Positions 10,295 to 61,705 of a stretch of DNA of 64,000 nucleotides are shown piece after piece. The notes under the pieces are model-generated. The model had not been told where the DNA came from, ran no database searches, and saw nothing but the letters and a program-made list of their open reading frames with translations. The translations under genes were made by a program, and so were the position numbers. This DNA is from Macrostomum lignano (lineage: Eukaryota): assembly GCA_002269645.1 (NCBI GenBank), contig NIVC01002230.1, forward strand, positions 1 through 64,000, read 5' to 3'. Positions within the stretch are counted from its first letter, which is position 1; each line of letters opens with the position of its first letter.

Positions 10295-14287
<3,993 letters not shown>

Positions 14288-22092: not shown

Positions 22093-25000
22093 ATGCCAAC
22101 CAGGACAGTTGGCTTAAAGAAGCTACTCATTCGCAATTTCCAGTTGCGCAATCAGTCTCAAGCTTCGGCTTCGGCCGCTGCTGCCGCCGCCGCGGCTCCG
22201 CACGCCAGCCGCTACGTGGCCGACCCGACCGGGGCAGCGGCCGCGGCCGCCTCCGTCCTGTCGCTGTCCTCGGCCGGCGGCTCCGCTGCTCATCGATTCG
22301 AAGGCGACCCGGCCGACACCGTTCACTACTGGAGCCTGGTGGGCAGCTGGGAGGACTTCAAGCGAAGCAAGCACACCATGGTGGCGCATATCGAGGCTGG
22401 CAGATACTTCCTGTACGCTTTCGGTGGCGACAATGGCCGCGCTACGTTGAATGACGTGCTCAGGTGAAGTGTCCATCACTAACCCTGAGTCTCTAGACTG
22501 GTGTCTAACCCTGAGTCTCTAGACTAGTGTCTAACCCTGAGTCTCTAGACTGGTGTCTAACCCTGAGTCTCTAGACTAGTGTCTAACCCTGAGTCTCTAG
22601 ACTGGTGTCTAACCCTGAGTCTCTAGACTAGTGTCTAACCCTGAGTCTCTAGACTGGTGTCTAACCCTGAGTCTCTAGACTGGTGTCTCACCCTGAGTCT
22701 CTAGACAGACTGGTGTCTAACCAGTCTAAAATTTAGGATCTCAGCCCTGAATCTCTGACGATCTCACCATTGAATCTCCAGAAATGTCATCCGTAAATCT
22801 CCATAAATACGAGTATCATCCCTAAATCTGCAGAAGTCTCATCCCTGAATCTCCAGAAATCTCATCCCTGAATCTCCAGAAATCTCATCCCTGAATCTCC
22901 AGAAATCTCATCCCTGAATCTCCAGAAATCTCATCCCTGAATCTCCAGAAATCTCATCCCTGAATCTCCAGAAATCTCATCCCTGAATCTCCAGAAATCT
23001 CATCCCTGAATCTCCAGAAATCTCATCCCTGAATCTCCAGAAATCTCATCCCTGAATCTCCAGAAATCTCATCCCTGAATCTCCAGAAATCTCATCCCTG
23101 AATCTCCAGAAATCTCATCCCTGAATCTCTCACTAAATCCATTTCTCGCTAACCGCGTCTCCACCACGTCAGATACGACATCGAAGCCCGCACGTGGACG
23201 CAGGTGCTGCCAGTGAACGGCACCCCGCCGGCGCCCCGCTACACTCACTCAGCGGTGGTCGCCGACGACTCCATGCTGATATTCGGTGGCTACACAGGCG
23301 AAGAGAACAAAAACGACCTGTTCGAGTACCGGTTCGGCTCGCGCTACTGGGCCGAGTGGAAATTCGACGCCAAATCGGCAAAGCCTGTGCCACGCACCGC
23401 CCATTGCGCTTTTGTCTACGACGGCAGGATGTGGATCTACGCCGGATACGACGGCAACAGGCGGCTCAACGACCTGTGGAACACGCCCGTGCCGTCCAGC
23501 TACGGAGCCTCCCCCATGGCCGTTCACTTCTGGGAGGAGGCCCAGCAGATGGGCGCCCAGCCGCCGCCTCTGTGCAACTTCTCGCTGACGGTGGGTTTGA
23601 GAGAAGCATTTTGTGTCATAGCCAGTGCCTCATTGTAGTCACAGCCAGTGCCGCATATTGCAGTCACAGCCAGTGCCTCATTGTAGTCACAGCCAGTGCC
23701 TCATTGTAGTCACAGCCAGTGCCTCATTGTAGTCACAGCCAGTGCCGCATATTGCAGTCACAGCCAGTGCCTGATTGTAGTCACAGCCAGTGCCGCATAT
23801 TGCAGTCACAGCCAGTGCCTCATTATAGTCACAGCCAGTGCCGCATATTGTTGTCACAGCCAGTGCCGTATATTGCAGTCACAGCCAAGTGCCTCATTAT
23901 AGTCACAGCAAGTGCCTCATTATAGTCACAGCCAGTGCCTCATTATAGTCACAGCCAATGCCTCATTATAGTCACAGCCAGTGCCTCATTATAGTCACAG
24001 CCAATGCCTCATTATAGTCACAGCCAGTGCCTCATTATAGTCACAGCCAGTGCCTCATTATAGTCACAGCCAGTGCCTCATTATAGTCACAGCCAGTGCC
24101 TCATATTGTTGTCACAGCCAGTGCCTCATATTGTTGTCACAGCCAGTGCCTCATATTGTTGTCACAGCCAGTGCCTCATATTGTAGTCACAGCCAGTGCC
24201 GCATATTGTAGTCACAGCCAGTGCCGCATATTGTAGTCACAGCCAGTGCCGCATATTGTAGTCACAGTCAGTGCCGCATATTGTAGTCACAGTCAGTGCC
24301 GCATATTGTAGTCACAGTCAGTACCGCATATTGTAGTCACAGCCAGTGCCGCATATTGTAGTCACAGTCAGTACCGCATATTGTAGTCACAGCCAGTGCC
24401 GCATATTGTAGTCACAGTCAGTACCGCATATTGTAGTCACAGTCAGTGCCGCATATTGTAGTCACAGCCAGTGCCGTATATTGTAGTCACAGCCAGTGCC
24501 GTATATTGTAGTCACAGTCAGTACCGCATATTGTAGTCACAGTCAGTGCCGCATATTGTAGTCACAGCCAGTGCCGTATATTGTAGTCACAGTCAGTACC
24601 GCATATTGTTAATCACAGTCAATGCCGCATATTGTAGTCACAGTCAGTGCCGCATATTGTAGTCACAGCCAGTGCCGTATATTGTAGTCACAGTCAGTAC
24701 CGCATATTGTAGTCACAGTCAGTGCCGCATATTGTAGTCACAGCCAGTGCCGTATATTGTAGTCACAGTCAGTACCGCATATTGTAGTCACAGTCAGTGC
24801 CGCATATTGTAGTCACAGCCAGTGCCGTATATTGTAGTCACAGTCAATGCCGCATATTGTAGTCACAGTCAGTGCCTCATATTGTCACATGTCACAGCGA
24901 CAGTCGCAGTGTCTCATCCAGTGCCTGAATATATGTCCGAATCTTTGTTGTGAAATATTTCATAACTGACAGGCTCACATTTATTATCTCTTGTACTATA

Positions 25001-32021: not shown

Positions 32022-35000
32022 ATGGCCTTTCTAGACTGGACTAAGCGCTCAGATGTAAGTACTCGCTGATGTCCCGTGTGTGCGTATTCCTGCCGCAGCG
32101 TCCAGCTTTTCGCGTATTTATGCTAATAATTTCCCTTCTCTATATTTATGATATTAACCTACAGTGCTCATCGGTAAGCTGATATTTAAGTGCCTTAAAA
32201 TTGTTATATTCCAGTCATACTACTAATAGTGCTAATACAGCTAGTCAGCAGTGTAATAATTAATTGCTGATTTCAATATGCGCTTTTACTTGCACTTTAT
32301 GTTTTAAATGTAATAAATGTAATTTGAGGTCATAGTGAGTGGAGTAGCATGGGATCCGACTGGGGTGTATTTTGGGATCATAGTGAGTGGAGTATCATGA
32401 CTGGATCAGACTGGGGTGGGGAGTAGCATGGGATCAGACTGGGGGAGTAGCATGGGATCAGACTGGGGGAGTAGCATGGGATCAGACTGTGGGGGGAGTA
32501 GCATGGGATCAGACTGTGGGGGGAGTAGCATGGGATCAGACTGGGGGAGTAGCATGGGATCAGACTGGGGGAGTAGCATGGGATCAGACTGTGGGGGAGT
32601 AGCATGGGATCAGACTGGGGGAGTAGCATGGGATCAGACTGGGGGAGTAGCATGGGATCAGACTGTGGGGGAGTAGCATGGGATCAGACTGTGGGGGAGT
32701 AGCATGGGATCAGACTGGGGGAGTAGCATGGGATCAGACTGGGGGAGTAGCATGGGATCAGACTGTGGGGGGAGTAGCATGGGATCAGACTGGGGGAGTA
32801 GCATGGGATCAGACTGGGGGAGTAGCATGGGATCAGACTGTGGGGGGAGTAGCATGGGATCAGACTGGGTGGGGAGTAGCATGGGATCAGACTGGGTGGG
32901 GAGTAGCATGGGATCAGACTGTGGGGGGAGTAGCATGGGATCAGACTGGGTGGGGAGTAGCATGGGATCAGACTGTGGGGGGGAGTAGCATGGGATCAGA
33001 CTGGGTGGGGAGTAGCATGGGATCAGACTGGGGGAGTAGCATGGGATCAGACTGGGGGAGTAGCATGGGATCAGACTGTGGGGGGAGTAGCATGGGATCA
33101 GACTGTGGGGGGGAGTAGCATGGGATCAGACTGGGTGGGGAGTAGCATGGGATCAGACTGGGTGGGGAGTAGCATGGGATCAGACTGTGGGGGGGAGTAG
33201 CATGGGATCAGACTGGGTGGGGAGTAGCATGGGATCAGACTGTGGGGGGGAGTAGCATGGGATCAGACTGGGTGGGGAGTAGCATGGGATCAGACTGTGG
33301 GGGGAGTAGCATGGGATCAGACTGGGTGGGGAGTAGCATGGGATCAGACTGTGGGGGGGAGGTAGCATGCGATCAGACTGGGGGGTAGGTGGCATGGGAT
33401 TAGACTGGGGTGGGGAGTAGCATGGGATCGGACTGGGGGGAGTAGCATGGGATCGGACTGGGGGGAGTAGCATGGGATCAGACTGGGGGGAGTAGCATGG
33501 GATCAGACTGGGGGGAGTAGCATGGGATCGGACTGGGGAGAGTAGCATGGGATCAGAATGGGGGGGAGTAGCATGGGATCAGACTGGGGTGGGGAGTAGC
33601 ATGGGATCAATATTTTATTAGTAGTTTGAATATTTATTAATAACGGTCGTATTTATCCGGTTGGCCTAAATTGAGCATGAACCTAGTGTTGGAAATCATT
33701 GCCTCAATCAGCAAACTGGCTCATATGCTATCTGTTTTTCTTTATAATCTGTAAAATTATGGATTGTTCAGCTTATAGACGGCAAAAATCTGCGTTGATT
33801 TTTTTGCATAATTTACTTGTTTAAACGAGCGCGCGGCCAATTCACTATCAATACGGCCACTTTCTCCAATCCGCAGGCGTCATTCTTTCAGAAGCCGTCA
33901 GTTTATCACGCTCTAATCGTGATATTCCTAGAATTCTTCGCCTGGGGCCTGCTCACTAATCCCATGATCAACGTGCTCGAGGAGACGTTTCCGGCGCATA
34001 AATTCCTTATGAACGGCCTTATTCAAGGCGTGAAGGTGAGTAGCTTTTGAAGTTTGGGGCTTTTGAAGTTTAGATTCGAGCTTGTGAAGCTTCGAGCTTG
34101 TGAAGCTTCGAGCTTGTGAAGCTTCGAGCTTGTGAAGCTTCGAGCTTGTGAAGCTTCGAGCTTGTGAAGCTTCGAGCTTGTGAAGCTTCGAGCTTGTGAA
34201 GCTTCGAGCTTGTGAAGCTTCGAGCTTGTGAAGCTTCGAGCTTGTGAAGCTTCGAGCTTGTGAAGCTTCGAGCTTGTGAAGCTTCGAGCTTGTGAAGCTT
34301 CGAGCTTGTGAAGCTTCGAGCTTGTGAAGCTTCGAGCTTGTGAAGCTTCGAGCTTGTGAAGCTTCGAGCTTGTGAAGCTTCGAGCTTGTGAAGCTTCGAG
34401 CTTGTGAAGCTTCGAGCTTGTGAAGCTTCGAGCTTGTGAAGCTTCGAGCTTGTGAAGCTTCGAGCTTGTGAAGCTTCGAGCTTGTGAAGCTTCGAGCTTG
34501 TGAAGCTTCGAGCTTGTGAAGCTTCGAGCTTGTGAAGCTTCGAGCTTGTGAAGCTTCGAGCTTGTGAAGCTTCGAGCTTGTGAAGCTTCGAGCTTGTGAA
34601 GCTTCGAGCTTGTGAAGCTTCGAGCTTGTGAAGCTTCGAGCTTGTGAAGCTTCGAGCTTGTGAAGCTTCGAGCTTGTGAAGCTTCGAGCTTGTGAAGCTT
34701 CGAGCTTGTGAAGCTTCGAGCTTGTGAAGCTTCGAGCTTGTGAAGCTTCGAGCTTGTGAAGCTTCGAGCTTGTGAAGCTTCGAGCTTGTGAAGCTTCGAG
34801 CTTGTGAAGCTTCAGCTTGTGAAGCTTCGAGCTTGTGAAGCTTCGAGCTTGTGAAGCTTCGAGCTTGTGAAGCTTCGAGCTTGTGAAGCTTCGAGCTTGT
34901 GAAGCTTCGAGCTTGTGAAGCTTCGAGCTTGTAAAGCTTCGAGCTTGTGAAGCTTCGAGCTTGTGAAGCTTCGAGCTTGTAAAGTCTCAGCAAAATTGAT

Positions 35001-38000
35001 ACTCCAACTGATTGCTTCACAATTGATTGCTACTGAATAACAAGTAGTAGTTCAATAGCGTATGTACTGCGAAACTTAAAATCATTGCAGGGCTTCCTCT
35101 CCTTCCTGGCCGCTCCCCTGGTCGGCGCTCTGTCGGACGTGTTCGGCCGCAAAACTTTTCTATTGGTGACGGTGTTTTTCACCTGTTCCCCAATCCCCTT
35201 TATGCACGTGTCACACTGGTGGTACTTCACTTTGATCACCGTGTCCGGCATCTTCTCCGTCACCTTCTCCGTTGTGTTCGCCTACGTGTCGGACGTGACC
35301 ACCGAGGAGGACCGCAGCTGGGCCTACGGCCTCGTCTCGGCCAGCTTCGCTGCCAGCCTCATCACTTCTCCGGCAATTGGCGCCCACCTGGGCAAATTGT
35401 ATAGCGACAACTTTGTAGTGGCTCTGGCCACGTTTGTGGCTCTGCTGGACATCTTCTTTATACTGACAGTGAGACTGCGGGCTGCAATTCTTGAGCTTTG
35501 GGATTTTTACTCAGCTTTGAAACAGGCTGGAATCTCATAGTAAACATGCTTAAACAGGCTGGAATCTCATAGTAAACAGATGCATAAACAAGCTGGAATC
35601 TCATAGTAAACAGATGCATAAACAAGCTGGAATCTCATAGTAAACAGATGCATAAACAAGCTGCAACCTCATAGTAAACAGCTGCATAAACAAGCTGGAA
35701 TCTCATAGTAAACAGATGCATAAACAAGCTGGAATCTCATAGTAAACAGATGCATAAACAAGCTGGAATCTCATAGTAAACAGATGCATAAACAAGCTGG
35801 AATCTCATAGTAAACAGATGCATAAACAAGCTGGAATCTCATAGTAAACAGATGCATAAACAAGCTGCAACCTCATAGTAAACAGATGCATAAACAGGCT
35901 GCAATCCCACTGTAAACAGATGCATAAACAGGCTGCAATCCCACTGTAAACAGATGCATAAACAGGCTGCAATCCCATAGTAAACAGATGCTTAAACAGG
36001 CTGCAATCCCATAGTAAACAGATGCATAAACAGGCTGCAATCCCACTGTAAACAGATGCATAAACAGGCTGCAATCCCACTGTAAACAAATGCATAAACA
36101 GGCTGGAATCTCATAGTAAACAGATGCTTAAACAGGCTATAAAGTCGGACAATAAAAGCCGGAATCGAACCCCCGCCCGCAGGTGGTGCCGGAGTCCCTA
36201 TCAGAGAAGAACCGCTGCGTTGCCTGGGGCTCGCAGATCAGCTGGGCCAAGGCCGATCCGTTCTCCTCGCTGCGCAAGATGGGCGCCGACCAGCTCATTC
36301 TGATGCTGTGCATCACCACCTTTCTGAGCTACCTGCCCGAGGCTGGCGAGTACACCTGCTTCTTTGTCTACCTTCGCCTCATCATGGGCTTCTCAGAGGA
36401 GGGCGTGGCGTATTTCATCTGCGTTGTGGGCATTCTGTCCTGCATTGCCCAGACAGCCGGCCTGAGCTTTTTAATCAAGCACTGCGGCCCGAAGCGGACA
36501 ATCATGATTGGCCTGGTGTTCCACATGCTGCAGATGGGCATCTACGGATTCTCCTCCCAGACTTTCCTGCTCTGGCTGGCCGGCTGCCTGGCCGCTCTGG
36601 GCAGCATCACCTACCCGGCCATCTCCGCCTTCGTGTCCAACCACGCCGAGCAGGACCAGCAGGGCGTCGCCCAGGGCATCCTGACCGGCATCCGCGGCCT
36701 GTGCAACGGCCTCGGCCCGGCCCTGTTCGGCTTCATCTTCTACGTGTTCGAGGTGGACTTAAACGACGCGCCTAAAATGGCCTCCTCGCCGCTCATTCCC
36801 GGCCTGGCTGGCGCCGCCAATCGGACTGCAGCTGCTACGGTTGGTCTGCTTCTTTTAGGGGTGTCTGACTTGCGTCTGCCTTGTGTCTGCTTGTGTCCTT
36901 CTAGACTTCTAGTGTCCTTCTCTGCTGTCTTTTTCTCTGTCTGCCTGCCTGTCTATCTGTCTGTCTGTTTCTGTTTGTCTGTCTGTTTGTCTGTATGTCT
37001 GTCTGTCCATCTGTTACTTAATCCATGCCTCCCAGGCTATCTAGCATCCAATTCTACAGAGGTTTAAATATCCATTAATTTTCCAAATCCCAATAGGTTA
37101 AATCAGTAGAGACTGTTTTGATTTGCTGTTGGGCAGCCCATATTATACGACAAGGATTTTATCTGCCATAAATTTCCAGGTCGCATCGGCAGGCGTCACC
37201 GCCCTGAGCTGGCAGCAGCGAATGCACAACTTCAACAAGGCCATCATGCCAGGCCCGCCGTTCGCTTTCGGAGCCGTGCTGGTGCTGCTGGCCATCCTTG
37301 TGTCCGTGCTGATCCCCGACAACCCGCACTCCAGCATCAACATCAGCGTTAAGCCGGGCGACGGGCACAGGCGGACGCCCAGCTTAGTTATTAATTATCA
37401 CAGATTGGGTGAGTGCCTGACCCCCGATTCTCTGTATCTGACATCCTATTCACAGCATCTGACACCCTATTCACAGTATCTGACACCCTATTCACAGCAT
37501 CTGACACCCTATTCACAGTATCTGACACCATATTCACAGTATCTGACACCCTATTCACAGTATCTGACATCCTATTCACAGCATCTGACACCCTATTCAC
37601 AGTATCTGACACCATATTCACAGTATCTGACACCCTATTCGTAGTATCTGACACCCTATTCACAGTATCTGACACCATATTCACAGTATCTGACACACTA
37701 TTCACAGTATCTGACACACTATTCACAGTATCTGACACCCTATTCACAGTATCTGACATCCTATTCACAATATCTGACATCCTATTCATAGTATCTGACA
37801 CCCTATTCATAGTATCTGACATCGTATTCACAGTATCTGACACTATTCACAGTATCTGACACACTATTCACAGTATCTGACATCCTATTCACAGTATCTG
37901 ACACCCTATTCACAGTATCTGACACCCTATTCACAGTCTCTGACACCCTATTCACAGTATCTGACACCCTATTCACAGTATCTGACACCCTATTCACAGT

Positions 38001-40838: not shown

Positions 40839-41666
40839 ATGGCACCCCTGCGCCTCTGCACCCTCCCGGTTGGCTGCAGCCGCCTCGCCGCTCCCTTGGC
40901 CGGCCTGCTCAGGCGAGCTGCCTTCTCCAGCTCCTCTGCGCGGTTCCACGTCGCCGCGTCTGACGCAGCAGAGAGCTCCTCGCCGCCCCAGCAGCCTCAG
41001 CAGAATATCCGTCGAGTAGCCTTGGACTTCAACGAAGTTCGTCTAGTCGGTCGAGTCTCCAAGGTGCTGAATTTGAGCGCCCAGTGGGCCTCGTTCCTGC
41101 TGTCAACTCAGAACCAGCGCCTGGTCCGGCCGGCGGAGCCCGGCAACGACCAGCAGCCGCAGGTCCGGCAGGAGCGAATCTCCCACCTGGTGATCGCGCG
41201 GACCGCCGGCCCCGGCAGAGCGGCCGGCCTGGCCGATGGCGAGTTCGAAGGCGGCGGCTCCGCTCAGGCTGGCGAGCCGGACTGGCAGCAGCACCTGTAC
41301 CCGGGCAGCCGGGTCGAGGTGGTCGGCCACCTGGCTAATCGGTTTGTTCGTCGGCCGGCTGGCGACGAAGCCACCAACGCCGTCGATGGCCAGCAGCAGC
41401 AGCAGCAGCAGCCTGACCGGCCGCAGTTCGAGCCGGTGATTCGAATGACCCGACTCGCCCCCATAGCCAATTCGGGTGTTGGCGGCTCCTTTGCTGACCA
41501 GCGCCAGCCGCAGCGGCAGTGGAGGCAGCGCCGCGATCGCGACAGCTGGGACGATGGCGACGACTCTGGCGAAGGCAGGCGCGGCGGCTCTGACCGCTCC
41601 AGTCGATCGGGCGGTCGGGCCGCGGATGATCGGGACCCCTGGTCGAAGCCGGCCGAGGGCAACTGA
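40839..41666 (+). CDS. divergent SSB-family OB-fold protein A (mtSSB-like), single exon, 275 aa, with presequence-like N-terminus and R/G/D-rich tail
   Basis: Arg/Leu/Ala/Ser-rich leader with no acidic residue in the first ~40 aa. DFNEVRLVGRV resembles SSBP1 LNRVHLLGRV; FLLST resembles FSLAT; SHLVIA resembles WHRISV; GSRVEVVGHL resembles GSRIYLEGKI. GC-rich codon usage like the neighbouring genes. Confidence 0.75.
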   Translation: MAPLRLCTLPVGCSRLAAPLAGLLRRAAFSSSSARFHVAASDAAESSSPPQQPQQNIRRVALDFNEVRLVGRVSKVLNLSAQWASFLLSTQNQRLVRPAEPGNDQQPQVRQERISHLVIARTAGPGRAAGLADGEFEGGGSAQAGEPDWQQHLYPGSRVEVVGHLANRFVRRPAGDEATNAVDGQQQQQQQPDRPQFEPVIRMTRLAPIANSGVGGSFADQRQPQRQWRQRRDRDSWDDGDDSGEGRRGGSDRSSRSGGRAADDRDPWSKPAEGN

Positions 41667-41984
41667 TGCGGTCGCATTTCGATGATTTTTTTTGTTTTAC
41701 TAGGGAGGGGAGTGTTTAATCTAAGCCTGATGATTACGTAGGTTTCAAATTTCGACGCGTATAAAAATAAGAACAACAAGATGCTTCAATACTACTCATA
41801 AGCAAAACAATATTGGCGAGCATTTCTTCAAACTTTACCCGCCTGGAGTCATGCAAAAATATTGTTATATTGGCCTCGTATATATTGATCTATTAATATA
41901 TAACTGTTGCATTGCACAGGCTTTTTAGTTAGAATAACTGCGTTAGTTTTATAATTGCTTTATAATCTATTTCTTTTCTGAGGA

Positions 41985-42790
41985 CCACTGGAGGATCAGC
42001 AGCGGGGGGAGCGGGCAGCTCACTGGAGGATATCAGCAGCAGGGGGTAGCGGACAGCTCACTGGAGGATATCAGCAGCAGGGGGTAGCGGGCAGCTCACT
42101 GGAGGATATCAGCAGCAGGGGGTAGCGGACAGCTCACTGGAGGATATCAGCAGCAGGGGTAGCGGACAGCTCACTGGAGGATATCAGCAGCAGGGGTAGC
42201 GGGCAGCTCACTGGAGGGTCAGCAGCAGGGGGTAGCGGACAGCTCACTGGAGGATCAGCAGCAGGGGGTAGCGGGCAGCTCACTGGAGGATATCAGCAGC
42301 AGGGGGTAGCGGGCAGCTCACTGGAGGATCAGCAGCAGGGGGTAGCGGGCAGCTCACTGGAGGATCAGCAGCAGGGGGTAGCGGGCAGCTCACTGGGGAT
42401 CAGCAGCGGGGGGGGGGGTAGCGGGCAGCTCACTGGAGGATCAGCAGCGGGGGGGGGTAGCGGGCAGCTCACTGGAGGATCAGCAGCAGGGGGTAGCGGG
42501 CAGCTCACTGGAGGATCAGCAGCAGGGGGTAGCGGGCAGCTCACTGGAGGATCAGCAGCAGGGGGTAGCGGGCAGCTCACTGGAGGATCAGCAGCAGGGG
42601 GTAGCGGGCAGCTCACTGGAGGATCAGCAGCAGGGGGTAGCGGGCAGCTCACTGGAGGATCAGCAGCAGGGGGTAGCGGGCAGCTCACTGGAGGATCAGC
42701 AGCAGGGGGTAGCGGGCAGCTCACTGGAGGATCAGCAGCAGGGGGTAGCGGGCAGCTCACTGGAGGATCAGCAGCAGGGGGTACAGGGTA
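41985..42790. repeat. 36-nt minisatellite between the two SSB-like genes
   Basis: CAGCTCACTGGAGGATCAGCAGCAGGGGGTAGCGGG units. Confidence 0.95.
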
Positions 42791-42908
42791 GCTCACCGAG
42801 GGGCCAACAAGTGAGGTATAGACAATAATTGATTGATCCCTATCCTTAAAAAATCGCTTTGTCTGCACAACTCTCTACTGCATGTAGACGCGCTCGCACG
42901 CAAGCGCC

Positions 42909-43956
42909 ATGCTCTCAGCGGCTTACAAGTCAATCGCCCGTCAGCTACTTCAGCAGCAGCAGCCGCAGCGGCTTCAGCTACTCACAGCCGGCTTGTACAC
43001 TTGGGATGGCAAGAACTACAGCGATAATCGCAGTAGACGACAGCCTGGAAGCGAAGGCGGCGAGCTTCGGGCCGCCGCTCCGCGCGACTATAACGAAATT
43101 AGGCTGCGGGGTACCGTTACCAAGGTAACGCATTCGGTTTTCTTGGATAGAATTATTATCTCAGTTGTTTGAATTCCTTGAATCCGTGATTCCTTGAATT
43201 CAAGTTTCCAGTCCATCATACTCGCAGTGGTCCTTGCATATAAGTGTCCAGTCCATACTCGCAGTGGTCCTTGCATTTGTGTCTAGTCCATCATACTCGC
43301 AGTGGTCCTTGCATTTGTGTCTAGTCCATCATACTCGCAGTGGTCCTTGTATTTGTGTCTAGTCCATCATACTCGCAGTGGTCCTTGCAATCAAGTGTCC
43401 AGTCCATTCTACTCGCAGTGGTCCTTGCATATAAGTGTCCAGTCCATACTCGCAGTGGTCCTTGCATTTGTGTCTAGTCCATCATACTCGCAGTGGTCCT
43501 TGCAATCAAGTGTCTAGTCCATCATACTCGCAGTGGTCCTTGCATTCAAGCGTCCAATCCCCCTCCCCATCCAATTGGCAGATATTCCAAGCCAACAACC
43601 GGGGCTGCCGGTTCATTCTGTGCACAAAGAAGCTCTACAGAAAGGTGAACCCGGGCGGCAGCTGGCGCTGGGCCGAGTCAACTGTCAATCACTATGTATT
43701 TGGCGGCGGGGTCAACCTGCCCAGCTACCTGCCCTACGTGTCCGTCGGCTCTCGGATCGACATGTCGGCTATAATATTTTATCAGGAGCGGCGCGGCCCG
43801 GCGGACAGCCAGGCGGAGGGCGCCAACGCCGCAGCCGACGCTGAGGCGCGCACCAACAGGCAGGCCAACCTGCGGCTGAACTGGTTGAAACCGGTTGAAG
43901 AAGAGGAAATGGTCGACATCAGCTTCGACGTGCAGTTGGACGAGTCAACTTATTAA
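42909..43956 (+). CDS. divergent SSB-family OB-fold protein B (mtSSB-like), 196 aa; exons 42909-43124, 43582-43956
   Basis: Phase-0 GTAACG donor and GGCAG acceptor join DYNEIRLRGTVTK|IFQANNRGCRFILCT. Later NHYVFG, YVSVGSRIDMSAII and RQANLRL align with the SSB beta-strands and with protein A. Acidic C-terminus. Confidence 0.7.
43205..43545. repeat. ~38-nt minisatellite in SSB-like B intron
   Basis: GTCTAGTCCATCATACTCGCAGTGGTCCTTGCATTTGT units. Confidence 0.9.
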
Positions 43957-44299: not shown

Positions 44300-44860
44300 T
44301 CCTAGATCAACTGGGGAAATTCCCCTCGGGAGCCCTGAATCAACTGGGGAAATTCCCCCCATGAGCCCTGAATCAACTAAGGGAAATCCCCCCTTTAAGC
44401 CCTGGATCATCCAAGCGAAATTCCCCCCATAAGCCCTGGATCAACTAAGGGAAATTCCCCCCATGAGCCCTGGATCATCCAAGCATAATTCCCCCTATGA
44501 GCCCTGGATCAACTGAGGTAAATCCCCCCTATCAGCCCTGGATCAACCAAGCGAAATTCCCCCCATAAGCCCTGGATCAACTAAGCATAATTCCCCCTAT
44601 GAGCCCTGGATCAACTGAGGTAAATCCCCCCTATCAGCCCTGGATCAACCAAATTCTCCTCATGAGCTTCGGATCGGAACAACTGAGGGAAGTTCCTCTC
44701 TGGAGCCCTGAATCACCTGAGGGTAATTCCCCATGAGCCCTGGATCAACAGAGGGAAAATCTCCCATGAGCCCTGGATCAACAGAGGGAAAATCTCCCAT
44801 GAGCCCTGGATCAACAGAGGGAAAATCTCCGATGAGCACTGGATTAACTGAAGAGAATTT
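44300..44860. repeat. ~35-nt degenerate minisatellite upstream of SLC25A32
   Basis: CCCTGGATCAACTAAGGGAAATTCCCCCCATGAG-like units. Confidence 0.88.
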
Positions 44861-44897: not shown

Positions 44898-46655
44898 ATG
44901 CTCACAATGCAGTCGGGCAGCAGTAGCAACGGCTCCGGCAGCTGGCAGCGTCAGTTGCTAAGCAACGTGCACTGGGAGAACATGGCGGCCGGCGTGGCTG
45001 GCGGCCTGCTGTCCACACTGGCCTTGCACCCGCTTGACCTGGTCAAGATTCGCTTCCAGGTGAGAGTTCTCAAGCTTTCAAGAGTTCTCAAGTATCAGGT
45101 AGCGAAGGTGTCCCAATGAATTACTACATAGAGATACAACCAGTAGTGCTCAATAGAATTAGTCGATGCGGAAGTCTCTGATCCCCAATGACTCACCACC
45201 CGCACCCCAACCAGGTGGACGAAGGAGTCGGCGCCAGCGGCCGTCCCAGCTCCCGGCCGGTGTACCGCGGCCTGATGCACGCGCTGTCCAGCATCTACCG
45301 GACGCAGGGCCTGACAGGCCTGTACGCCGGGGTGGTGCCGAACCTGTGGGGCGCGGGCGCCAGCTGGGGTCTGTACTTCCTGTTCTACGAGGCCGCCAAG
45401 GTGCAGCTGCAGGGCGGCGACCGGACAGCCCGTCTGCCAGCCGGACACCTGATGGGAGCGGCAGCGGCGTCCGGCGCGGTCACGCTGATGTTCACCAACC
45501 CCATCTGGGTGTGCAAGACCCGGCTGTGCCTGCAGTACGGCCTGGGATCTGGCACCTCGGTAGCGGCGCATCGCTACAGGGGCATGCTGCACGCTCTGTA
45601 CAGCATCGCCCGGTTGGAGGGTCTGCCCGGGCTGTACAAGGTAGGAGGGAGTCTTGGGAGACTGCGGCATTATTGGCTGACTCTTTATTTAGCTTTGATT
45701 ATTGACTTCATTGTTGATATATTGATTGGTTGTTAGGTTAGTTGGTAGACAGATTAGTAGGTTTATTAGTAGATCGATATGTAGGTTAATTAGTAGATCA
45801 GATCGATTAGTAGGTTGAATGGTAGATAGATTAGTAGGTTAATTGGTAGATTGATTAGTAGGTTCACTGGTAGATCGATTAGTAGGTAAATAAAGTAGAT
45901 CGATTAGTAGGTTATTTGGTAGATAGATGATTAGGTTAATTGTTAGATAAATTAGTAGGTTAATTGGTAGATAGATTAATAGGTTAATTGGTACAATAGA
46001 TAGATTAGTGGGTTAAATGGTACAATAGATAGATTAGTAGGTTGATTGGTAGATAGATTAGTAGGTTAATTGGTAGATTAGTGGGTTTATTGGTAAATAG
46101 ATTAGTGGGTTAGTTGGTAGATAGATTAATAGGGTAGCTCTAAACTATAAATTTATCTATTGGAGTATGTTAGTAGATATCAATCAATAATCCCGGGTTG
46201 TCGAATATCCTAGACTTTGAATCCTGACGTACGCAAACTTCTGCGTTGCCTCACTCAACCAGGGCTACTTGCCCGGCCTGTTCGGCGTCTCCCACGGCGC
46301 CATCCAGTTTCTGGTGTACGAGAAGATGAAGAACCAGTACACATCCGCCTATCAGCTGGCCGCGAACGCCAAACTGCCCACCCTGGTGTACCTGGGCTGC
46401 GCCGCCCTCTCCAAGATTGTGGCCGCGGCCACCACTTATCCCTACCAGGTGATCAGGTCCCGCCTGCAGGAGCAGCACAGGGAGTCGCGCGGCGCCCTCC
46501 GCGTCTGCCGCGACCTTCTAGCCGTTGAAGGCTGGCGCGGCTTCTACAAAGGCTTGCTGCCAACCCTGCTGAGAGTGACTCCGGCCTGCTGCATCACCTT
46601 CGTGGTGTACGAGCACTTTGCCACCTTCCTGATGCCGTTAAGGCACGCCACGTGA
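44898..46655 (+). CDS. SLC25A32: mitochondrial folate/FAD carrier SLC25A32, ~326 aa; exons 44898-45059, 45215-45640, 46263-46655
   Basis: Three carrier signatures: HPLDLVKIRFQ, NPIWVCKTRLCLQY, YPYQVIRSRLQ. Also GASWGLYFLFY, PGLFGVSHGAIQF, RVTPACCITFVVYE. GT-AG phase-0 introns. The exact start is uncertain (ATG 44898 or 44907, or an upstream exon). Confidence 0.93.
45745..46135. repeat. degenerate GATTAGTAGGTTAATTGGTAGATA-type repeat, SLC25A32 intron 2
   Basis: Read directly. Confidence 0.8.
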
Positions 46656-47519
46656 CATGACACCGGTAGCACACCTACCTTTCATTATGCTTAGCTGTAT
46701 TTTTACTAGAGGCAGGGGAGTGTACGCTCATCCTTAGGCATGTACACCTCACTGTGTCTGGGGGGGGGGGGGGGGGGGTTGGCCCTCAAGGGTGTTAATT
46801 GCACGAGCAGAGCCAAGTCGGGACAATTCATTTTAGTCCCAAATTAATGCGACTGCACTTGAAATCGAGCCTCGGATTCTGGCACATCAGAGAGTCTGGC
46901 TACGCCCCCCATGCTTAGCTGTAGCTTTCATGCCAATCTGTTAGTACTGTTGCTTCTCACATTATTTTTGCAAACTGTCTAATTTCTCTATTTTGTCAGA
47001 GGGGCACCGCTGCCCGCCCTATTGTTAGTGAAAATTAGATTGTTTTATTAAACAATATAGTTCTTGCGGACCGATATTTTAGCCTGTTTAGCGTATTTTA
47101 TCGTTGATTATTTAACTGCATTATTTGACAGATTTCATAGCAGCGCATTTCGATAGCATATTATATTACGAGTACAATTATGATGCAATTACGATGTTAT
47201 TTGCCTTGTTTTTTGAGTCCGATTAACTAGTTTTAAAGATGTTTGATACAGTGCACCGCTGTGTTCAATGCAGTTCATAACAGTAGACACTTAACCAAGC
47301 CATTTTTGCGCTTTCTACCGGTAATAACTCGGTGGTTACCAGTAATTAAAGGTTGCCGAACAATTTTGCCACCTAATTGCATTAAGTTATTCAGCTAATT
47401 GAATGCCTCCAGCGCATCTGTTAATTTTAGTGCTTGATTTTTATTGATGAATTAAAACGCTTAAATCTGCTGACGTGCTGCTCTTTGTTGCTTTATTTAA
47501 CTGCTAACTGTAGGTTATT

Positions 47520-51408: not shown

Positions 51409-51689
51409 GCTTTGGCAGCTAAACATTTGCCTGGACATTCTATGGATTGTTTCTCCTGTTTTAATTCAAGTTCATTATATTGGTTTCAGAGTGATCTGTT
51501 TATCGAATTATAAACCGTTTATTCTTGTTTCTAGGATTGACTTTAAAATTTGTTTATTCCATAAATAGATTGTTTAAAACGAAAGCTTATATACGAGTAT
51601 TTTGGTAGTTGCGGTTTTATTAATATGCTATTCGCAATCGTGTTCTGCTTTTTTCGATTCTAGTTTATACGAAAATCCATCCTAGGTAT

Positions 51690-52620
51690 ATAGCAGTCCT
51701 TGGCTGCCAGTTATCCAGTCCAAGTAGAACTATAGCAGTCCTTGGCTGCCAGTTATCCAGTCCAAGTAGAACTAAAGCAGTCCTTGGCTGCCAGTTATCC
51801 AGTCCAAGTAGAACTATAGCAGTCCTTGGCTGCCAGTTATCCAGTCCAAGTAGAACTAAAGCAGTCCTTGGCTGCCAGTTATCCAGTCCAAGTAGAACTA
51901 AAGCAGTCCTTGGCTGCCAGTTATCCAGTCCAAGTAGAACTAAAGCAGTCCTTGGCTGCCAGTTATCCAGTCCAAGTAGAACTATAGCAGTCCTTGGCTG
52001 CCAGTTATCCAGTCCAAGTAGAACTATAGCAGTCCTTGGCTGCCAGTTATCCAGTCCAAGTAGAACTATAGCAGTCCTTGGCTGCCAGTTATCCAGTCTA
52101 AGTAGAACTAAAGCAGTCCTTGGCTGCCAGTTATCCAGTCCAAGTAGAACTATAGCAGTCCTTGGCTGCCAGTTATCCAGTCCAAGTAGAACTATAGCAG
52201 TCCTTGGCTGCCAGTTATCCAGTCCAAGTAGAACTAAAGCAGTCCTTGGCTGCCAGTTATCCAGTCCAAGTAGAACTATAGCAGTCCTTGGCTGCCAGTT
52301 ATCCAGTCCAAGTAGAACTATAGCAGTCCTTGGCTGCCAGTTATCCAGTCCAAGTAGAACTATAGCAGTCCTTGGCTGCCAGTTATCCAGTCCAAGTAGA
52401 ACTATAGCAGTCCTTAGCTTCCAGTTTTCCAGTCCAAGTAGAACTATAGCAGTCCTTGGCTGCCAGTTATCCAGTCCAAGTAGAACTATAGCAGTCCTTG
52501 GCTGCCAGTTATCCAGTCCAAGTAGAACTATAGCAGTCCTTATCTGCCAGTTATCTAGTCCAAGTAGAACTATAGCAGTCCTTAGCTTCCAGTTTTCCAG
52601 TCCAAGTTGAACTATATGTC
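51690..52620. repeat. 42-nt minisatellite upstream of VPS51
   Basis: TATAGCAGTCCTTGGCTGCCAGTTATCCAGTCCAAGTAGAAC units; source of the 330-aa minus-strand pseudo-ORF. Confidence 0.96.
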
Positions 52621-57581: not shown

Positions 57582-60500
57582 ATGAAGCCAGCCCCTCGCC
57601 GACTGCTCATTCTGGACGGCCCGCCCGCCCTGCTGGCTCGGCTGCCGAAGTTCGCCAGGGCTTCGGGCGCCGCAGCGGGGACGCCAGCCAAGCAGCCGCC
57701 GCCTCCGCAGTCGGCCGGCAAAAGCCGCCGTCGCGCCCTGTCGCCTCAGCCGCTGGCCATGAAGATTGACAGCGGCGTCGCCGGCGGTGGTGACGCAGCC
57801 GCTGAGCAGGCGGCGGCCGACGCTCGATTCGCCGCCGTCTGGCCCTGGTACGAACAGCAGGCGGCCAGCGTCCTCGCCGAGTCCAACGTCGGCGTTTGCA
57901 GCAGTTTGGCCGACTTTCTGGCCGGACAGCACGCCGAATGGCTGCTCCGGTGGCGTCGACGGTCGGACTCGCCAACCGCCGATGACGACGGCTTCTTCGA
58001 CTGCCTGGCTGGCCGGCTGCCGTTCGCCGCGCTGCACTCCGGGGTCAACACGCCCGACAGGGACGCCATGCTGTCCGGCCTGACCGCCAGCCTTGAGGCG
58101 AGTGGGAATTTCCGACTGGCTCAGGTAGGTCACAGGGATTCTTCGGTTACCTTGACAAACTTTGGTAAGGCCTAGGGACTCATCAGTGACCTTGAAAAGA
58201 CACTGAGATTTTCCGGACACTTCAGAAACCTTGGAATTTCCCGGACAGTCTTGACTATGCCTGGGGATTTCCCGGACAGTCTTGACTATGCCTGGGGATT
58301 TCCCGGACAGCCTTGACTATGCCTGGGGCTTTCCGGACAGACTTGACTGTGCCTGGAGATTTCCCGGACAGTCTTGACTATGCCTGGGGCTTTCCGGACA
58401 GACTTGGCTGTGCCTGGGGATTTCCCGGACAGTCTTGACTATACCTGGGGCTTTCCGGACAGACTTGGCTGTGCCTGGGGATTTCCCGGACAGTCTTGAC
58501 TATGCCTGGGGCTTTCCGGACAGACTTGGCTGTGCCTGGGGATTTCCCGGACAGTCTTGACTATGCCTGGGGCTTTCCGGACAGACTTGGCTGTGCCTAG
58601 AGATTACTCTAAGATCTTTAAAAAATATCCCATTGAGACCTAACCCTGACGAGAGACCCGAAGATCCAACCAACACCCTTACGCTCTGCAACTGTCTCCC
58701 TCAGGTTGACTCCAGCGACCTGGTATCGTCTACTCAGCTGTTCTCCAAAGCGCTGGCCCAGTGGCTGCCGGAGATCGGGTCCACCCCGGTACAGGCTGGC
58801 AAAGTATCTGTCAATATAAAGCACACGTTTCTGCTGGCTGCTGAAGTCTATCAGAGCGTCTTCGGGGCTGCCGCGGACAAAAGGCAGAAGCAGCAAAAGC
58901 AACAGCCGCCGCAGCTCGTTCTGCTGATTCGCGACTTTGACGAGACCACCAGCGGCAAGGCGCTAAACAAATTTATTCTTGTGAGTGACATGTTTTCGTC
59001 TACTTAGTAAGTAGTACTTTATGCTGGTAAAGTGTCGGATGGCAGTGTCGGATCTGATGGCAGTGTCCGATCCTCAGCCGCCCTCCCCGTGTTTGTCGGA
59101 GGGGGGGGGGTTACTGCATGCTGCTAATTTTGCAACGTCACCCGATCGATCTCCTCCAGGTGAGCAGCCACTACGCGGCCCAGCTGCCCGTGGCCTGTGT
59201 GTGCAGCCTGTCCAAGACTCTGGCCAGCCTGCAGTCTCTGCTGTCCAGCCGCGCCTTGGCCCGCCTGTCCGTCCGCTGCTTCCGGTCCGCCCCGGCCGGC
59301 ATCCTGTTCGACCGGGTGCTGGACCGCGTCCTCATCAACTGCCGGCAGTGGCATTTCCGCCTCAGCCGGCCGACTTTTGACTGTCTAGTTGAAGCCTTCG
59401 ACGAGAGAGAGTTCTCCATAGCGGCCTTCATGCTGCGGCTGAGGCTCGCGCTGCTCGGCCATATCGGCGCCGAGGACCCGGCCGGCACGGCGCACCTTCG
59501 CCAGCTGCGCGCGGTGCCGCTGGTCATGCAGCTCATTGGCAAACTGCTCAACTGGGACTCGCGTCGGGACATCTATTCTCTGTTGCTTAGCAACCGGCAG
59601 CACCTGTGCGACAGCGAGGAATACCTGAGCCGCCTGGCCGCCCTGCTGGCTGAGAGCACCGAGACTGTGCTGGCCAGGGTGGATTCCGCCAGGCAGCTGC
59701 TCAACCTGCTCAATGAGGACTGCGACTCGCTCACCCAGTCGCTGCTTGCCGGCTGGTCCGCCTATCTTGACGAACTAGCCGATGAACTAACCAGACGGCG
59801 GGACGAGACCGCAGCTTTGACCGACCCTGCAGTTGCCAGCCCCGGACAGGGCGACCCCGGCTCCGAGCATAAGGTGTGCGGCTGGGGTACTCTGTGTTGT
59901 CCGGGCCTCCCATTCTCAAGCTTGGCCGCTACCCTCCCAGATTCTCAGTTGCTGGGCCAGCCTCCCAGATGCTCAGCTGCTGGGCCAGTCTCCCAGATCC
60001 CCACCAGTTGCTAGGCCAGCCTCTCAGATCCTCAGTTGCTGTTTGCCAGCCTCCCAGATCCTCAGTTGCTGTTTGCCAGCCTCCCAGATCCTTAGTTGCT
60101 GTTTGCCAGCCTCCCAGATCCTCAGTTGCTGGGCCAGCCTCCCAGATCCTCAGTTGCTGGGCCAGCCTCCCAGATCCTCAGTTGCTGGGCCAGCCTCCCA
60201 GATCCTCAGTTGCTGAGCCAGCCTCCCAGATCCTCAGTTGCTGAGCCAGCCTCCCAGATCCTCAGTTGCTGAGCCAGCCTCCCAGATCCTCAGTTGCTGA
60301 GCCAGCCTCCCAGATCCTCAGTTGCTGAGCCAGACTCGCAGATCCTCAGTTTCTGGGCCAGCCTCCCAGATCCCCACCAGTTGCTAGGCCAGCCTCTCAG
60401 ATCCTCAGTTGCTGGGCCAGCCTCCCAGATCCCCACCAGTTGCTAGGCCAGCCTCTCAGATCCTCAGTTGCTGGGCCAGCCTCCCAGATCCTCAGTTGCT

Positions 60501-61705
60501 GAGCCAGCCTCCCAGATCCTCAGTTGCTGAGCCAGCCTCCCAGATCCTCAGTTGCTGAGCCAGCCTCCCAGATCCTCAGTTGCTGAGCCAGCCTCCCAGA
60601 TCCTCAGTTGCTGAGCCAGACTCGCAGATCCTCAGTTTCTGGGCCAGCCTCCCAGATCCCCACCAGTTGCTAGGCCAGCCTCTCAGATCCTCAGTTGCTG
60701 GGCCAGCCTCCCAGATCCCCACCAGTTGCTAGGCCAGCCTCTCAGATCCTGAGTTGCTGGGCCAGCCTCCCAGATCCCCACCAGTTGCTAGGCCAGCCTC
60801 TCAGATCCTCAGTTGCTGGGCCGCCTCCCAGATCCTGAGTTGCTGGGCCAGCCTCCCAGATCCCCACCAGTTGCTAGGCCAGCCTCTCAGATCCTCAGTT
60901 GCTGGGCCGCCTCCCAGATCCTGAGTTGCTGGGCCAGCCTCCCAGATCCTCAGTTGCTGGGCCGCCTCCCAGATCCTGAGTTGCTGGGCCAGCCTCCCAG
61001 ATCCCCACCAGTTGCTAGGCCAGCCTCTCAGATCCTCAGTTGCTGGGCCGCCTCCCAGATCCTGAGTTGCTATGTCTTTCTAGTTTGCAGCAACTCACTG
61101 TGCCTATTTTTTGCCATGGAAACGTACCTACTTATTGCCATGGAAACGTACCTACTTATTGCCATGGAAACGCACCTATTTGCCCGCATCAGCTGACCCG
61201 GCAGGCGCAGCGCCAGCAGCTGGAGGCTGAGATCAGCCGTCGCGCTGAGCAGACCAAAATCGGCGCCAATCTGCGCACCCGCCTGGTCGATTGTCTCAAT
61301 AGGCGCCTACGCGCCGACCTGCAAGCGCCGCTGCCCGGCCTCCACGCCAACTGCCGGCCTGCGCTGACGGCCGCCTTCGCCGCCGATCCGGCCGGCTGGC
61401 TTGAGAAGCAGCTGCTGGGCGGCGATGAGGCGGAGGTCAGCGAGTCAAACGGCATGGCGGACGTGCGCGTGGCCTTCCGCCTGGTGAAGGAGTGCCGCAG
61501 GCTGGTCCGCACCGTGGAGCTCATGCAGTCGTTTGCCGCCTGCCGCGCCGCCGATGGTGACGCTGGCAATGCCGAGAATTCGCCGTCGCCGTCGCAGATG
61601 CTGCAAGTTCGATTCATGCGGGCCTGCGCTCAGCTGCAGCTCATGGGCTTCGTGAAGATCTCCGCCCAGCGGCCCGACCGCATCGTTAGGCTCACCGCCG
61701 TCTGA
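57582..61705 (+). CDS. ORC3: origin recognition complex subunit 3, ~681 aa; exons 57582-58124, 58705-58980, 59160-59873, 61193-61705
   Basis: LPFAALHSGVNTPD, LVLLIRDFDE...LNKFIL|VSSH, EREFSIAAFMLRLRLALLGH. Winged-helix end VAFRLVKECRRLV...QVRFMRACAQLQLMGFVKISAQRPDRIVRLT resembles ORC3 [31 protein letters not shown]. Three phase-0 GT-AG introns. Confidence 0.88.
58225..58598. repeat. 30/31-nt alternating minisatellite, ORC3 intron 1
   Basis: ATTTCCCGGACAGTCTTGACTATGCCTGGGG alternating with CTTTCCGGACAGACTTGGCTGTGCCTGGGG. Confidence 0.9.
59925..61070. repeat. 28-nt minisatellite, ORC3 intron 3
   Basis: GCCAGCCTCCCAGATCCTCAGTTGCTGG and variants. Confidence 0.95.

What the first reader, a model, noticed from the sequence alone, without database searches (positions are those of the whole stretch)
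40839..43956. Tandem pair of highly divergent SSB-type OB-fold genes with mitochondrial-like leaders
Seen: two adjacent co-oriented genes whose cores align strand by strand. A has DFNEVRLVGRVSKV...FLLST...ISHLVIA...HLYPGSRVEVVGHL...FEPVIRM. B has DYNEIRLRGTVTKI...FILCT...VNHYVFG...YVSVGSRIDMSAII...RQANLRL. Both start with 30-40 aa basic, acid-free leaders. Known: this strand pattern is the SSB/SSBP1 OB fold, animals normally have one well-conserved SSBP1, and SSB-derived OB folds have been repurposed for organellar nucleic-acid work elsewhere (trypanosome KREPA editosome subunits, plant OSB proteins). Inference: these are too divergent to be ordinary SSBP1 and may be a lineage-specific pair forming a hetero-oligomer in mitochondrial DNA or RNA metabolism. 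Gene B is visible only after splicing, so automated annotation could miss the pair.
Basis: partly seen in the sequence, partly recalled or inferred. Interest (0 to 1): 0.8.

Follow-up and report, generated by a model that had tools for sequence, protein, structure and literature searches.

The report
Divergent tandem SSB-fold genes in a flatworm
Two neighbouring Macrostomum lignano genes encode very divergent proteins predicted to have the fold of the single-stranded-DNA-binding protein SSB; both are already annotated, and one is already named SSB in UniProt, so this is a modest lineage-specific duplication, not a new kind of system.

Summary
Gene A (40839-41666, one exon, 275 aa) and gene B (42909-43124 + 43582-43956, GT-AG intron, 196 aa) are co-oriented paralogues: BLASTP E=1e-6, and 0 of 2000 shuffles reach their alignment score.

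No sequence-only method recognises them. Pfam, NCBIfam, PDB sequences, an SSBP1 HMM and an exhaustive HMMER scan of 1.84 billion proteins were all negative.

AlphaFold2 models built only from the A/B copies give a five-stranded OB barrel. Foldseek then returns almost only SSB-family structures. For A, 183 hits have E<=1e-3 (best 4.7e-7), including human mtSSB and trypanosome editosome OB folds. B is weaker (best 4e-4).

A profile-profile comparison with vertebrate SSBP1 is weak but collinear over strands 1-4, and 0 of 300 shuffled controls reach its score.

The window is Macrostomum lignano. Both genes are already in the RNA-seq-derived GenBank annotation (PAA59621.1, PAA59622.1), and B is named "Single-stranded DNA-binding protein" in UniRef. 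The pair occurs on three contigs.

Most likely B is the fast-evolving mitochondrial SSB equivalent. A is a tandem paralogue with two loop insertions and a disordered Arg/Gly/Asp-rich tail.

Mitochondrial targeting, hetero-oligomer formation, an RNA role and the absence of a canonical SSBP1 remain untested.

The parts
40839..41666 (+). Gene A, single-exon CDS of 275 aa plus stop. It matches GenBank PAA59621.1 (BOX15_Mlig034073g3, 'hypothetical protein') at 99% identity.
40839..40961 (+). Leader of A, residues 1-41. It has 5 Arg, no Asp or Glu, and is rich in Ala, Leu and Ser. A helix is predicted at residues 17-29, but in a segment with pLDDT below 50.
   Evidence: Presequence function is inferred from composition only.
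41025..41468 (+). OB-fold core of A, residues 63-210. Strands at 66-79, 83-96, 108-121, 158-170 and 196-208, with a short helix at 149-152. Two low-confidence insertions at 123-147 and 171-195; the second contains a poly-Gln run.
   Evidence: AF2; Foldseek; hhalign
41469..41663 (+). C-terminal tail of A, residues 211-275. Rich in Arg, Gly, Asp, Ser and Gln, with predicted pLDDT below 50 throughout.
41986..42796 (.). 36-bp minisatellite (22 copies) that fills most of the A-B spacer. The copy number differs from the allelic or homeologous contig.
42909..43124 (+). Gene B exon 1, residues 1-72. It holds the leader and the start of strand beta1 (DYNEIRLRGTVTK). An in-frame TAG lies 8 codons upstream of the ATG.
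43125..43581 (+). Gene B intron with GT...AG ends. It interrupts beta1 and is made up mostly of a 38-bp tandem repeat (43191-43560). Gene A has no intron at the homologous position.
   Evidence: the spliced product equals PAA59622.1
43582..43956 (+). Gene B exon 2, residues 73-196 plus stop. It holds the rest of the OB core (strands 80-94, 101-116, 130-142, 164-176).
   Evidence: AF2; Foldseek
43894..43953 (+). Acidic C-terminal tail of B, residues 177-196 (VEEEEMVDISFDVQLDESTY), calculated pI about 4.
   Evidence: AF2 pLDDT below 50

Best explanation
A and B are a tandem pair of paralogous nuclear genes of Macrostomum lignano. Each encodes one SSB-family OB-fold domain behind a basic, acid-free N-terminal leader.

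My best reading is that both proteins are imported into mitochondria.

B is the shorter protein (196 aa precursor), it is the one with a trace of direct similarity to human SSBP1, and UniRef already names it SSB. I take it to be the fast-evolving functional equivalent of mtSSB: an oligomer that coats the single-stranded mtDNA exposed during replication.

A arose from the same ancestor by local duplication. It then lost or never gained the intron, acquired two loop insertions and gained a 65-residue disordered Arg/Gly/Asp-rich tail. It is therefore probably sub- or neo-functionalised, either as a second homo-oligomer or as a partner of B.

Shown here: paralogy, the gene structures, the presence of both genes in a transcript-derived annotation, and the predicted SSB-type fold.

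Inferred only: mitochondrial location, nucleic-acid binding, oligomeric state, and which of the two is the true mtSSB equivalent.
For: Paralogy: BLASTP E=1e-6; 0 of 2000 shuffles reach the alignment score.

Fold: AF2 models were built from an alignment of only the A/B copies, so no SSB sequences were supplied. They give the topology beta1-beta2-beta3-(helix)-beta4-beta5.

Foldseek against the PDB, model A: 183 hits at E<=1e-3, and the 50 hits listed are all SSB-family chains. Examples are Coxiella SSB (4.7e-7), human mtSSB 1s3o (1.6e-6, target-normalised TM-score (TMt) 0.63), human mtSSB 6rup (TMt 0.66), Plasmodium SSB, and T. brucei RECC1 chain 9dei_H (TMt 0.70).

Foldseek against the PDB, model B: PriB, bacterial SSB, human mtSSB and editosome OB folds at E from 4e-4 to 1e-2, with a few MCM chains of replisome entries among them.

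Profile-profile: hhalign of the A+B profile against vertebrate SSBP1 scores 24.2 (P=0.003) over 86 collinear columns spanning beta1 to beta4. None of 300 column-shuffled templates reaches this score (maximum 22.6).

Direct similarity: B against human SSBP1 gives BLASTP E=0.018 in the correct beta3-beta4 register.

Conserved His: the His of the SSB 'WH' motif (E. coli H55, human H85) aligns with a His shared by A (H116) and B (H109).

Leaders: acid-free and basic.

Annotation: the GenBank gene models are RNA-seq derived. They contain both genes, including B's splice. The pair lies on three contigs. UniRef names B 'Single-stranded DNA-binding protein'.
Against: No sequence-only method finds SSB. 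PF00436 is absent even at E<=10, as are NCBIfam matches. PDB sequence searches with A, with B and with the A+B profile found no SSB chain. An SSBP1 HMM gives negative bit scores.

The models have low overall confidence: mean pLDDT 44 for A and 50 for B, with strand blocks at about 74-80 in A and 54-71 in B.

In the weak alignment, the aromatic residues that stack on ssDNA in E. coli SSB are not kept. W40 becomes V in A and Y in B, W54 becomes S and N, and F60 becomes R in A and falls in a gap in B. Canonical ssDNA binding is therefore not assured, least of all for A.

The amphipathic moment of the leaders is no higher than in shuffled leaders, and no dedicated targeting predictor was available.

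Whether M. lignano also has a canonical SSBP1 could not be checked.
Confidence: 0.6

Rival explanations
1. A and B form an obligate hetero-oligomer, for example an A2B2 tetramer, that has replaced the canonical homotetrameric mtSSB in this lineage.
For: The genes are adjacent and co-oriented, and they are kept together on three contigs. Both keep the His that lies at the tetramer interface in E. coli SSB, according to the alignment. Their tails are complementary: A's is basic with Arg/Gly, B's is acidic.
Against: No multimer prediction or interaction data exist. Tandem position is the default result of duplication and says nothing about assembly. The three contigs are near-identical recent copies, differing by at most 0.5% in the coding sequence, so their shared arrangement is not independent conservation.
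Confidence: 0.2
2. One or both proteins have been repurposed for mitochondrial RNA metabolism, in the way the trypanosome KREPA OB-fold proteins have. The SSB-derived OB fold would act as an RNA-binding or scaffolding module.
For: The highest TM-score for A is to a RECC1 editosome chain (9dei_H, TMt 0.70, rmsd 3.5), and editosome entry 4dni is also hit. A's Arg/Gly-rich tail resembles the low-complexity tails of RNA-binding proteins (the resemblance rests on general knowledge). The canonical ssDNA-stacking aromatic residues are lost in the alignment.
Against: TM-scores to true SSBs are almost as high (0.58-0.67), so the structure comparison does not discriminate. There is no sequence similarity to any KREPA protein. 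To my knowledge, no unusual mitochondrial RNA processing is known in flatworms.
Confidence: 0.1
3. The OB fold is a modelling artefact, and A and B are lineage-specific proteins of some other fold and function.
For: The alignment is very shallow (6 sequences, in effect 2), mean pLDDT is 44-50, and all sequence-only searches are negative.
Against: Two separate models give the same topology. Their strands coincide with the segments conserved between A and B, and with the strand register that hhalign finds independently against SSBP1, which 0 of 300 shuffled controls match. Foldseek returns the SSB family specifically rather than a mixture of folds. An outside source names B as SSB.
Confidence: 0.08
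4. One of the two genes is an unexpressed or decaying duplicate, so only a single functional SSB-like gene exists.
For: A is more derived (insertions, a poly-Gln run, a low-complexity tail) and is annotated only as a 'hypothetical protein, partial'.
Against: Both reading frames are intact in all three genomic copies. Both gene models come from an annotation built from RNA-seq and transcript assemblies. The A-B divergence (about 25% identity) is old, yet both frames remain open.
Confidence: 0.07

Closest known systems
Animal mitochondrial SSB (SSBP1/mtSSB; PDB 1s3o, 3ull, 6rup, 8uzt)
   Same: Both have a single SSB-type OB domain behind an N-terminal leader. The fold matches by Foldseek (A to 1s3o E=1.6e-6, A to 6rup TMt 0.66; B to 1s3o E=2.5e-3). 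The profile-profile alignment is collinear over beta1 to beta4. The His of the WH motif is kept. B's size is close to that of an mtSSB precursor.
   Different: There is no PF00436 match and no significant sequence match. The aromatic ssDNA-contact positions are mostly replaced. A carries two loop insertions and a 65-aa Arg/Gly/Asp-rich tail. B carries a 20-aa acidic tail that animal mtSSBs lack (that they lack it is my own knowledge). There are two paralogues where animals usually have one gene.
Bacterial SSB and PriB (for example E. coli 1eyg and 1qvc, Coxiella 3tqy, PriB 1woc and 2ccz)
   Same: Same OB topology. These are the top Foldseek hits for both models. B's acidic and hydrophobic C-terminal tip is loosely reminiscent of the bacterial SSB C-terminal tip DFDDDIPF; this is an analogy only.
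   Different: A and B are eukaryotic nuclear genes, and B has a spliceosomal intron. There is no detectable sequence similarity. No Gly/Pro-rich linker of the bacterial type is present.
Kinetoplastid editosome OB-fold proteins (KREPA family; PDB 9dei chains H, M, E, P and J; 4dni)
   Same: Both are highly diverged SSB-like OB folds in several paralogues working in mitochondria. The highest TM-score for A is to 9dei_H (0.70).
   Different: There is no sequence similarity. U-insertion/deletion editing is confined to kinetoplastids (own knowledge). Hetero-oligomerisation of A and B is untested.
Plant organellar SSB paralogues (SSB1/SSB2, OSB1-4)
   Same: They set a precedent for lineage-specific multiplication and divergence of organellar SSB-fold proteins with added C-terminal regions (own knowledge; see also review PMC6963530, listed).
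   Different: OSB proteins are defined by a C-terminal PDF motif, which I did not test for. No sequence relationship was found in the exhaustive search.

Membership tests
SSB family (Pfam PF00436; bacterial SSB, PriB, mtSSB) | Significant match to the family's sequence profile | tested here: not met
   Pfam hmmscan at E<=10 finds no PF00436 for A or B. NCBIfam finds none. PDB phmmer and hmmsearch find no SSB chain. A vertebrate SSBP1 HMM gives -0.4 bits for both.
SSB family (Pfam PF00436; bacterial SSB, PriB, mtSSB) | OB barrel with SSB topology (beta1-beta2-beta3-helix-beta4-beta5, long hairpins) that retrieves SSB structures | tested here: met
   AF2 models from the A/B-only alignment. Foldseek for A: 183 hits at E<=1e-3, and the 50 listed are all SSB-family chains, TMt 0.58-0.70. 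For B the best hit is 4e-4, in the same family. Caveat: mean pLDDT is only 44-50, and 54-80 in the strands.
SSB family (Pfam PF00436; bacterial SSB, PriB, mtSSB) | Profile-profile homology signal to bona fide members | tested here: inconclusive
   hhalign probability is only 9-10%. However, P=0.003 over 86 collinear columns, and the score of 24.2 exceeds all 300 column-shuffled controls (maximum 22.6) and the reversed control (9.7).
SSB family (Pfam PF00436; bacterial SSB, PriB, mtSSB) | Conserved Trp/Phe ssDNA-stacking residues and the interface His (E. coli W40, W54, H55, F60, W88) | tested here: inconclusive
   The His is retained (A H116, B H109). W40 becomes V in A and Y in B, W54 becomes S and N, F60 becomes R in A and a gap in B, and W88 is not aligned. 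The mapping rests on a weak alignment.
SSB family (Pfam PF00436; bacterial SSB, PriB, mtSSB) | Binds ssDNA as a homotetramer or dimer | not testable with these tools
   Needs EMSA and size-exclusion or multimer modelling.
Animal mtSSB orthologue (SSBP1) | Cleavable mitochondrial presequence | tested here: inconclusive
   The composition fits: no acidic residue before position 42 (A) or 33 (B), with net charge +5 and +3. The hydrophobic moment is no better than in shuffled leaders. TargetP and MitoFates were not available.
Animal mtSSB orthologue (SSBP1) | Orthology: it is the SSB-family gene of the genome, with no other canonical SSBP1 present | not tested
The human SSBP1 search listed only vertebrate proteins.
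Kinetoplastid KREPA editosome OB-fold proteins | Sequence or profile relationship to KREPA proteins and membership of an RNA-editing complex | tested here: not met
   There is structural similarity only (9dei and 4dni). No sequence hit to those chains was found in PDB searches. Complex membership cannot be tested here.

The most novel reading that the evidence does not exclude
Macrostomum (or Macrostomorpha) has replaced the conserved homotetrameric mtSSB with a fast-evolving two-subunit SSB-fold system. A, with a basic Arg/Gly-rich tail, and B, with an acidic tail, would co-assemble. At least A would have lost the canonical aromatic ssDNA contacts and taken on a different ligand or role, such as RNA binding or nucleoid scaffolding.
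Probability: 0.15. Interest if true: 0.55.

Novelty: new member of a known kind. Interest (0 to 1): 0.3.

Why it matters
mtSSB is usually a single, well-conserved gene in animals. A tandem pair that no sequence profile recognises shows how far the mitochondrial replication machinery can drift in a flatworm. It also gives the 'hypothetical protein' PAA59621.1 (gene A) a fold assignment.

If the two proteins co-assemble, or if A has changed ligand, this would be a small natural experiment in SSB subfunctionalisation, in a model organism that can be made transgenic.

If a canonical SSBP1 also exists, or if B is simply the orthologue, this is an ordinary lineage-specific duplication.

Tried and rejected
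Searches and tests that led nowhere:
- Pfam and NCBIfam scans of A and B gave nothing relevant. The only Pfam line was T3SS_SCTL at E=0.036 on B's tail, below the family cut-off, and I dismissed it.
- PDB sequence searches with A, with B and with the A+B profile found no SSB chain.
- The word-indexed homologue searches returned only the M. lignano proteins themselves.
- The exhaustive HMMER search with the A+B core profile against 1.84 billion representatives returned only A, B and four long proteins matched in short, multiple stretches. I treat those four as low-complexity noise.
- The human SSBP1 search was meant to reveal a canonical M. lignano SSBP1 and to supply a family profile. It listed only vertebrate proteins.
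- Comparing the window with the allelic or homeologous contig to measure selection had no power. A's coding sequence differs at 4 sites (2 synonymous, 2 non-synonymous) and B's at 1, while the flanks differ by 0.3-2.7%.
- A hydrophobic-moment test of the leaders could not be told apart from shuffled leaders.
- Literature and supplement searches for the gene identifiers, SSBP1 or mtSSB in Macrostomum or flatworms found nothing.
- An Rfam scan of the window found no RNA family.

Rejected idea: that B would be missed by annotation. It is annotated with exactly this splice.
Full report
**Observation.** The region holds two co-oriented genes on the + strand.
- Gene A is an uninterrupted ORF, 40839..41666, of 275 aa.
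- Gene B is read by joining 42909..43124 to 43582..43956. The removed 43125..43581 starts with GT and ends with AG, the frame is preserved, and the product is 196 aa.
- An in-frame TAG lies 8 codons upstream of B's ATG, so the start is well defined.
- The first acidic residue is at position 42 in A and 33 in B, after 5 and 3 basic residues respectively.

**Source and annotation.** The window is Macrostomum lignano.
- A is 99% identical to PAA59621.1 (BOX15_Mlig034073g3, 'hypothetical protein, partial').
- Spliced B is 100% identical over its full length to PAA59622.1 (BOX15_Mlig002114g4).
- UniRef100_A0A1I8FYV6 names B 'Single-stranded DNA-binding protein'.
- On contig NIVC01002245.1 the two genes are adjacent. 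They are followed by a mitochondrial-carrier gene, a gelsolin gene and a gene with Dor1, Sec5 and Vps51-type domains. The window is 91-98% identical to that contig.
- Further copies of both genes (PAA55361.1 with PAA55360.1, and PAA59788.1 with an unnamed A copy) lie on two more contigs.
- The GenBank annotation of this assembly was built from RNA-seq, StringTie/TACO transcripts and a de novo transcriptome, with ORFs called by TransDecoder (PMC5730564). Both gene models, including B's intron, therefore rest on transcripts.

**Are A and B related?** Yes.
- BLASTP gives E=1e-6 over the first 40 core residues.
- A local alignment of the cores scores 81, against 27.8 +/- 4.9 for shuffled B, with 0 of 2000 shuffles reaching it.
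- The C-terminal halves alone align collinearly with p of about 0.01.
- Identity is about 25-27%.
- B's intron splits strand beta1, and A has no intron there.

**Are they SSB-type OB folds?** Sequence-only methods say nothing.
- Pfam shows no PF00436 even at E<=10.
- NCBIfam has no match.
- PDB phmmer with A or B, and hmmsearch with the A+B profile, find no SSB chain.
- A vertebrate SSBP1 HMM gives negative bit scores.
- An exhaustive hmmsearch of the A+B core profile against 1.84 billion cluster representatives finds only A, B and four noise hits.
- B against human SSBP1 gives a marginal BLASTP hit (E=0.018), but in the right place: VFGGGVNLPSYLPYVSVGSRIDM aligned with [22 protein letters not shown]. 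A gives nothing.

Two more sensitive tests agree with each other.

*Test 1, profile-profile comparison.* hhalign of the A+B profile against 16 vertebrate SSBP1 sequences aligns 86 columns collinearly through beta1 (NEVRLVGRV with NRVQLLGRV), beta2, beta3 and beta4 (PGSRVEVVG with KGARIYVEG). P=0.003, although hhalign's own probability is only 9-10%. In my control, none of 300 column-shuffled templates reached the score (24.2 against a mean of 12.3, sd 2.4, maximum 22.6). The reversed template scored 9.7.

*Test 2, structure prediction.* AlphaFold2 was run on alignments holding only the six A/B copies, so no SSB information was supplied.
- For A it predicts strands at 66-79, 83-96, 108-121, 158-170 and 196-208, with a short helix at 149-152. 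pLDDT is 74-80 in the strand blocks.
- For B it predicts strands at 63-77, 80-94, 101-116, 130-142 and 164-176, with pLDDT 54-71.
- Overall confidence is low (mean pLDDT 44 and 50) because the leaders, loops and tails are disordered.
- Foldseek against the PDB returns 183 hits at E<=1e-3 for A. The 50 listed are all SSB-family chains: bacterial SSBs, human mtSSB (1s3o at 1.6e-6; 6rup with TMt 0.66), Plasmodium SSB, and the SSB-like OB folds of the T. brucei editosome (9dei_H with TMt 0.70; 4dni).
- For B the same family tops the list (PriB, SSB, human mtSSB, 9dei), with a few MCM chains among the hits, at E from 4e-4 to 1e-2 and TMt around 0.5.
- The predicted strands coincide with the blocks conserved between A and B and with the hhalign register.

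I conclude that the SSB-type fold is well supported (about 0.85), while sequence-level family membership is not demonstrable.

**Residue-level look.** I mapped E. coli SSB onto human SSBP1, then onto A through hhalign, then onto B through the A-B alignment. Both reference sequences were verified against the PDB.
- The interface His (E. coli H55, human H85) is kept as A H116 and B H109.
- The stacking aromatic residues are not kept. W40 becomes V (A) and Y (B), W54 becomes S and N, and F60 becomes R in A and a gap in B.
- The alignment is weak, so this is only a hint that ligand contacts have changed, more so in A.

**Anatomy beyond the core.**
- A has two low-confidence insertions, at 123-147 and at 171-195 (the latter with a poly-Gln run). 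It also has a 65-residue tail rich in Arg, Gly, Asp and Ser.
- B ends in a 20-residue acidic tail, VEEEEMVDISFDVQLDESTY.
- Both leaders are basic and acid-free. Helices are predicted in them only at pLDDT below 50.
- A crude hydrophobic-moment test did not separate the leaders from shuffled versions.
- Mitochondrial import is therefore an inference from composition and from the family, not a tested result.

**Mechanism (best reading, confidence about 0.6).**
- Both are nuclear-encoded mitochondrial SSB-fold proteins.
- B is the fast-evolving mtSSB equivalent, coating single-stranded mtDNA during replication.
- A is a tandem paralogue that has diverged further and may act as a second oligomer or as a partner of B.
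- The rivals are an obligate heterotetramer, an RNA-directed role like that of KREPA proteins, a modelling artefact, and one dead copy. Each is listed in its own section with its evidence.

**What could not be settled.**
- Whether M. lignano also has a canonical SSBP1. The human SSBP1 search listed only vertebrates, and no flatworm genome can be searched with the remaining tools.
- Whether orthologues exist in other flatworms. None appeared at E<=1e-3 in the exhaustive search, but that threshold requires about 40 bits or more.
- Selection on the copies. They are too similar to give any power.
- Oligomeric state.

**Verdict.** The 'hidden from annotation' point is wrong, and the functional speculation is untested. 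This is a new, very divergent member pair of a known family, and one member is already labelled SSB in a public database. Interest is modest.

Noticed in passing
window 1-64000 (for example 3863-4759, 6872-8331, 8790-9947, 23606-24885, 32341-33609, 34075-34984, 51689-52616, 59933-63610): The window holds about 30 minisatellite arrays with units of 16-68 bp and up to about 130 copies. They occupy a large share of the non-coding DNA. Many of the long mechanical ORFs lie inside these arrays, and their Pfam matches (Enas, PhyR_sigma-like, DACNV, and DUF5575_N below its cut-off) are repeat artefacts.
   Followed up: partly
window 41986-42796, 43191-43560, 44301-44851: Three unrelated minisatellites sit in or just beyond the pair. 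A 36-bp array fills the A-B spacer, a 38-bp array fills B's intron, and a 34-bp array lies between B and the next gene. The spacer array differs in copy number between the window and contig NIVC01002245.1.
   Followed up: partly
window about 44898-46900 (+); L001 11992-13953: The next gene downstream of B, on the same strand, encodes a mitochondrial carrier (PF00153, 325 aa). It is therefore a third likely mitochondrial protein gene in a row. Nothing suggests that this is more than coincidence.
   Followed up: no
window 12950-14287 (-), 36183-37067 (+), 59118-60014 (+): Other recognisable gene fragments in the window are an amiloride-sensitive sodium channel (ASC, E=9e-24), an MFS transporter segment (E=5e-10) and an ORC3 N-terminal segment (E=3e-10).
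   Followed up: no
window 16001-18000: A strongly AT-rich stretch (GC 0.295) in a window that otherwise has GC 0.41-0.62. I did not examine it.
   Followed up: no
window 33009-53644 compared with L001: The window is a second copy (allelic or homeologous) of NIVC01002245.1. Aligned blocks are 91-98% identical, but within the A-B genes identity is at least 99.5%. This fits the recent genome duplication reported for M. lignano.
   Followed up: partly
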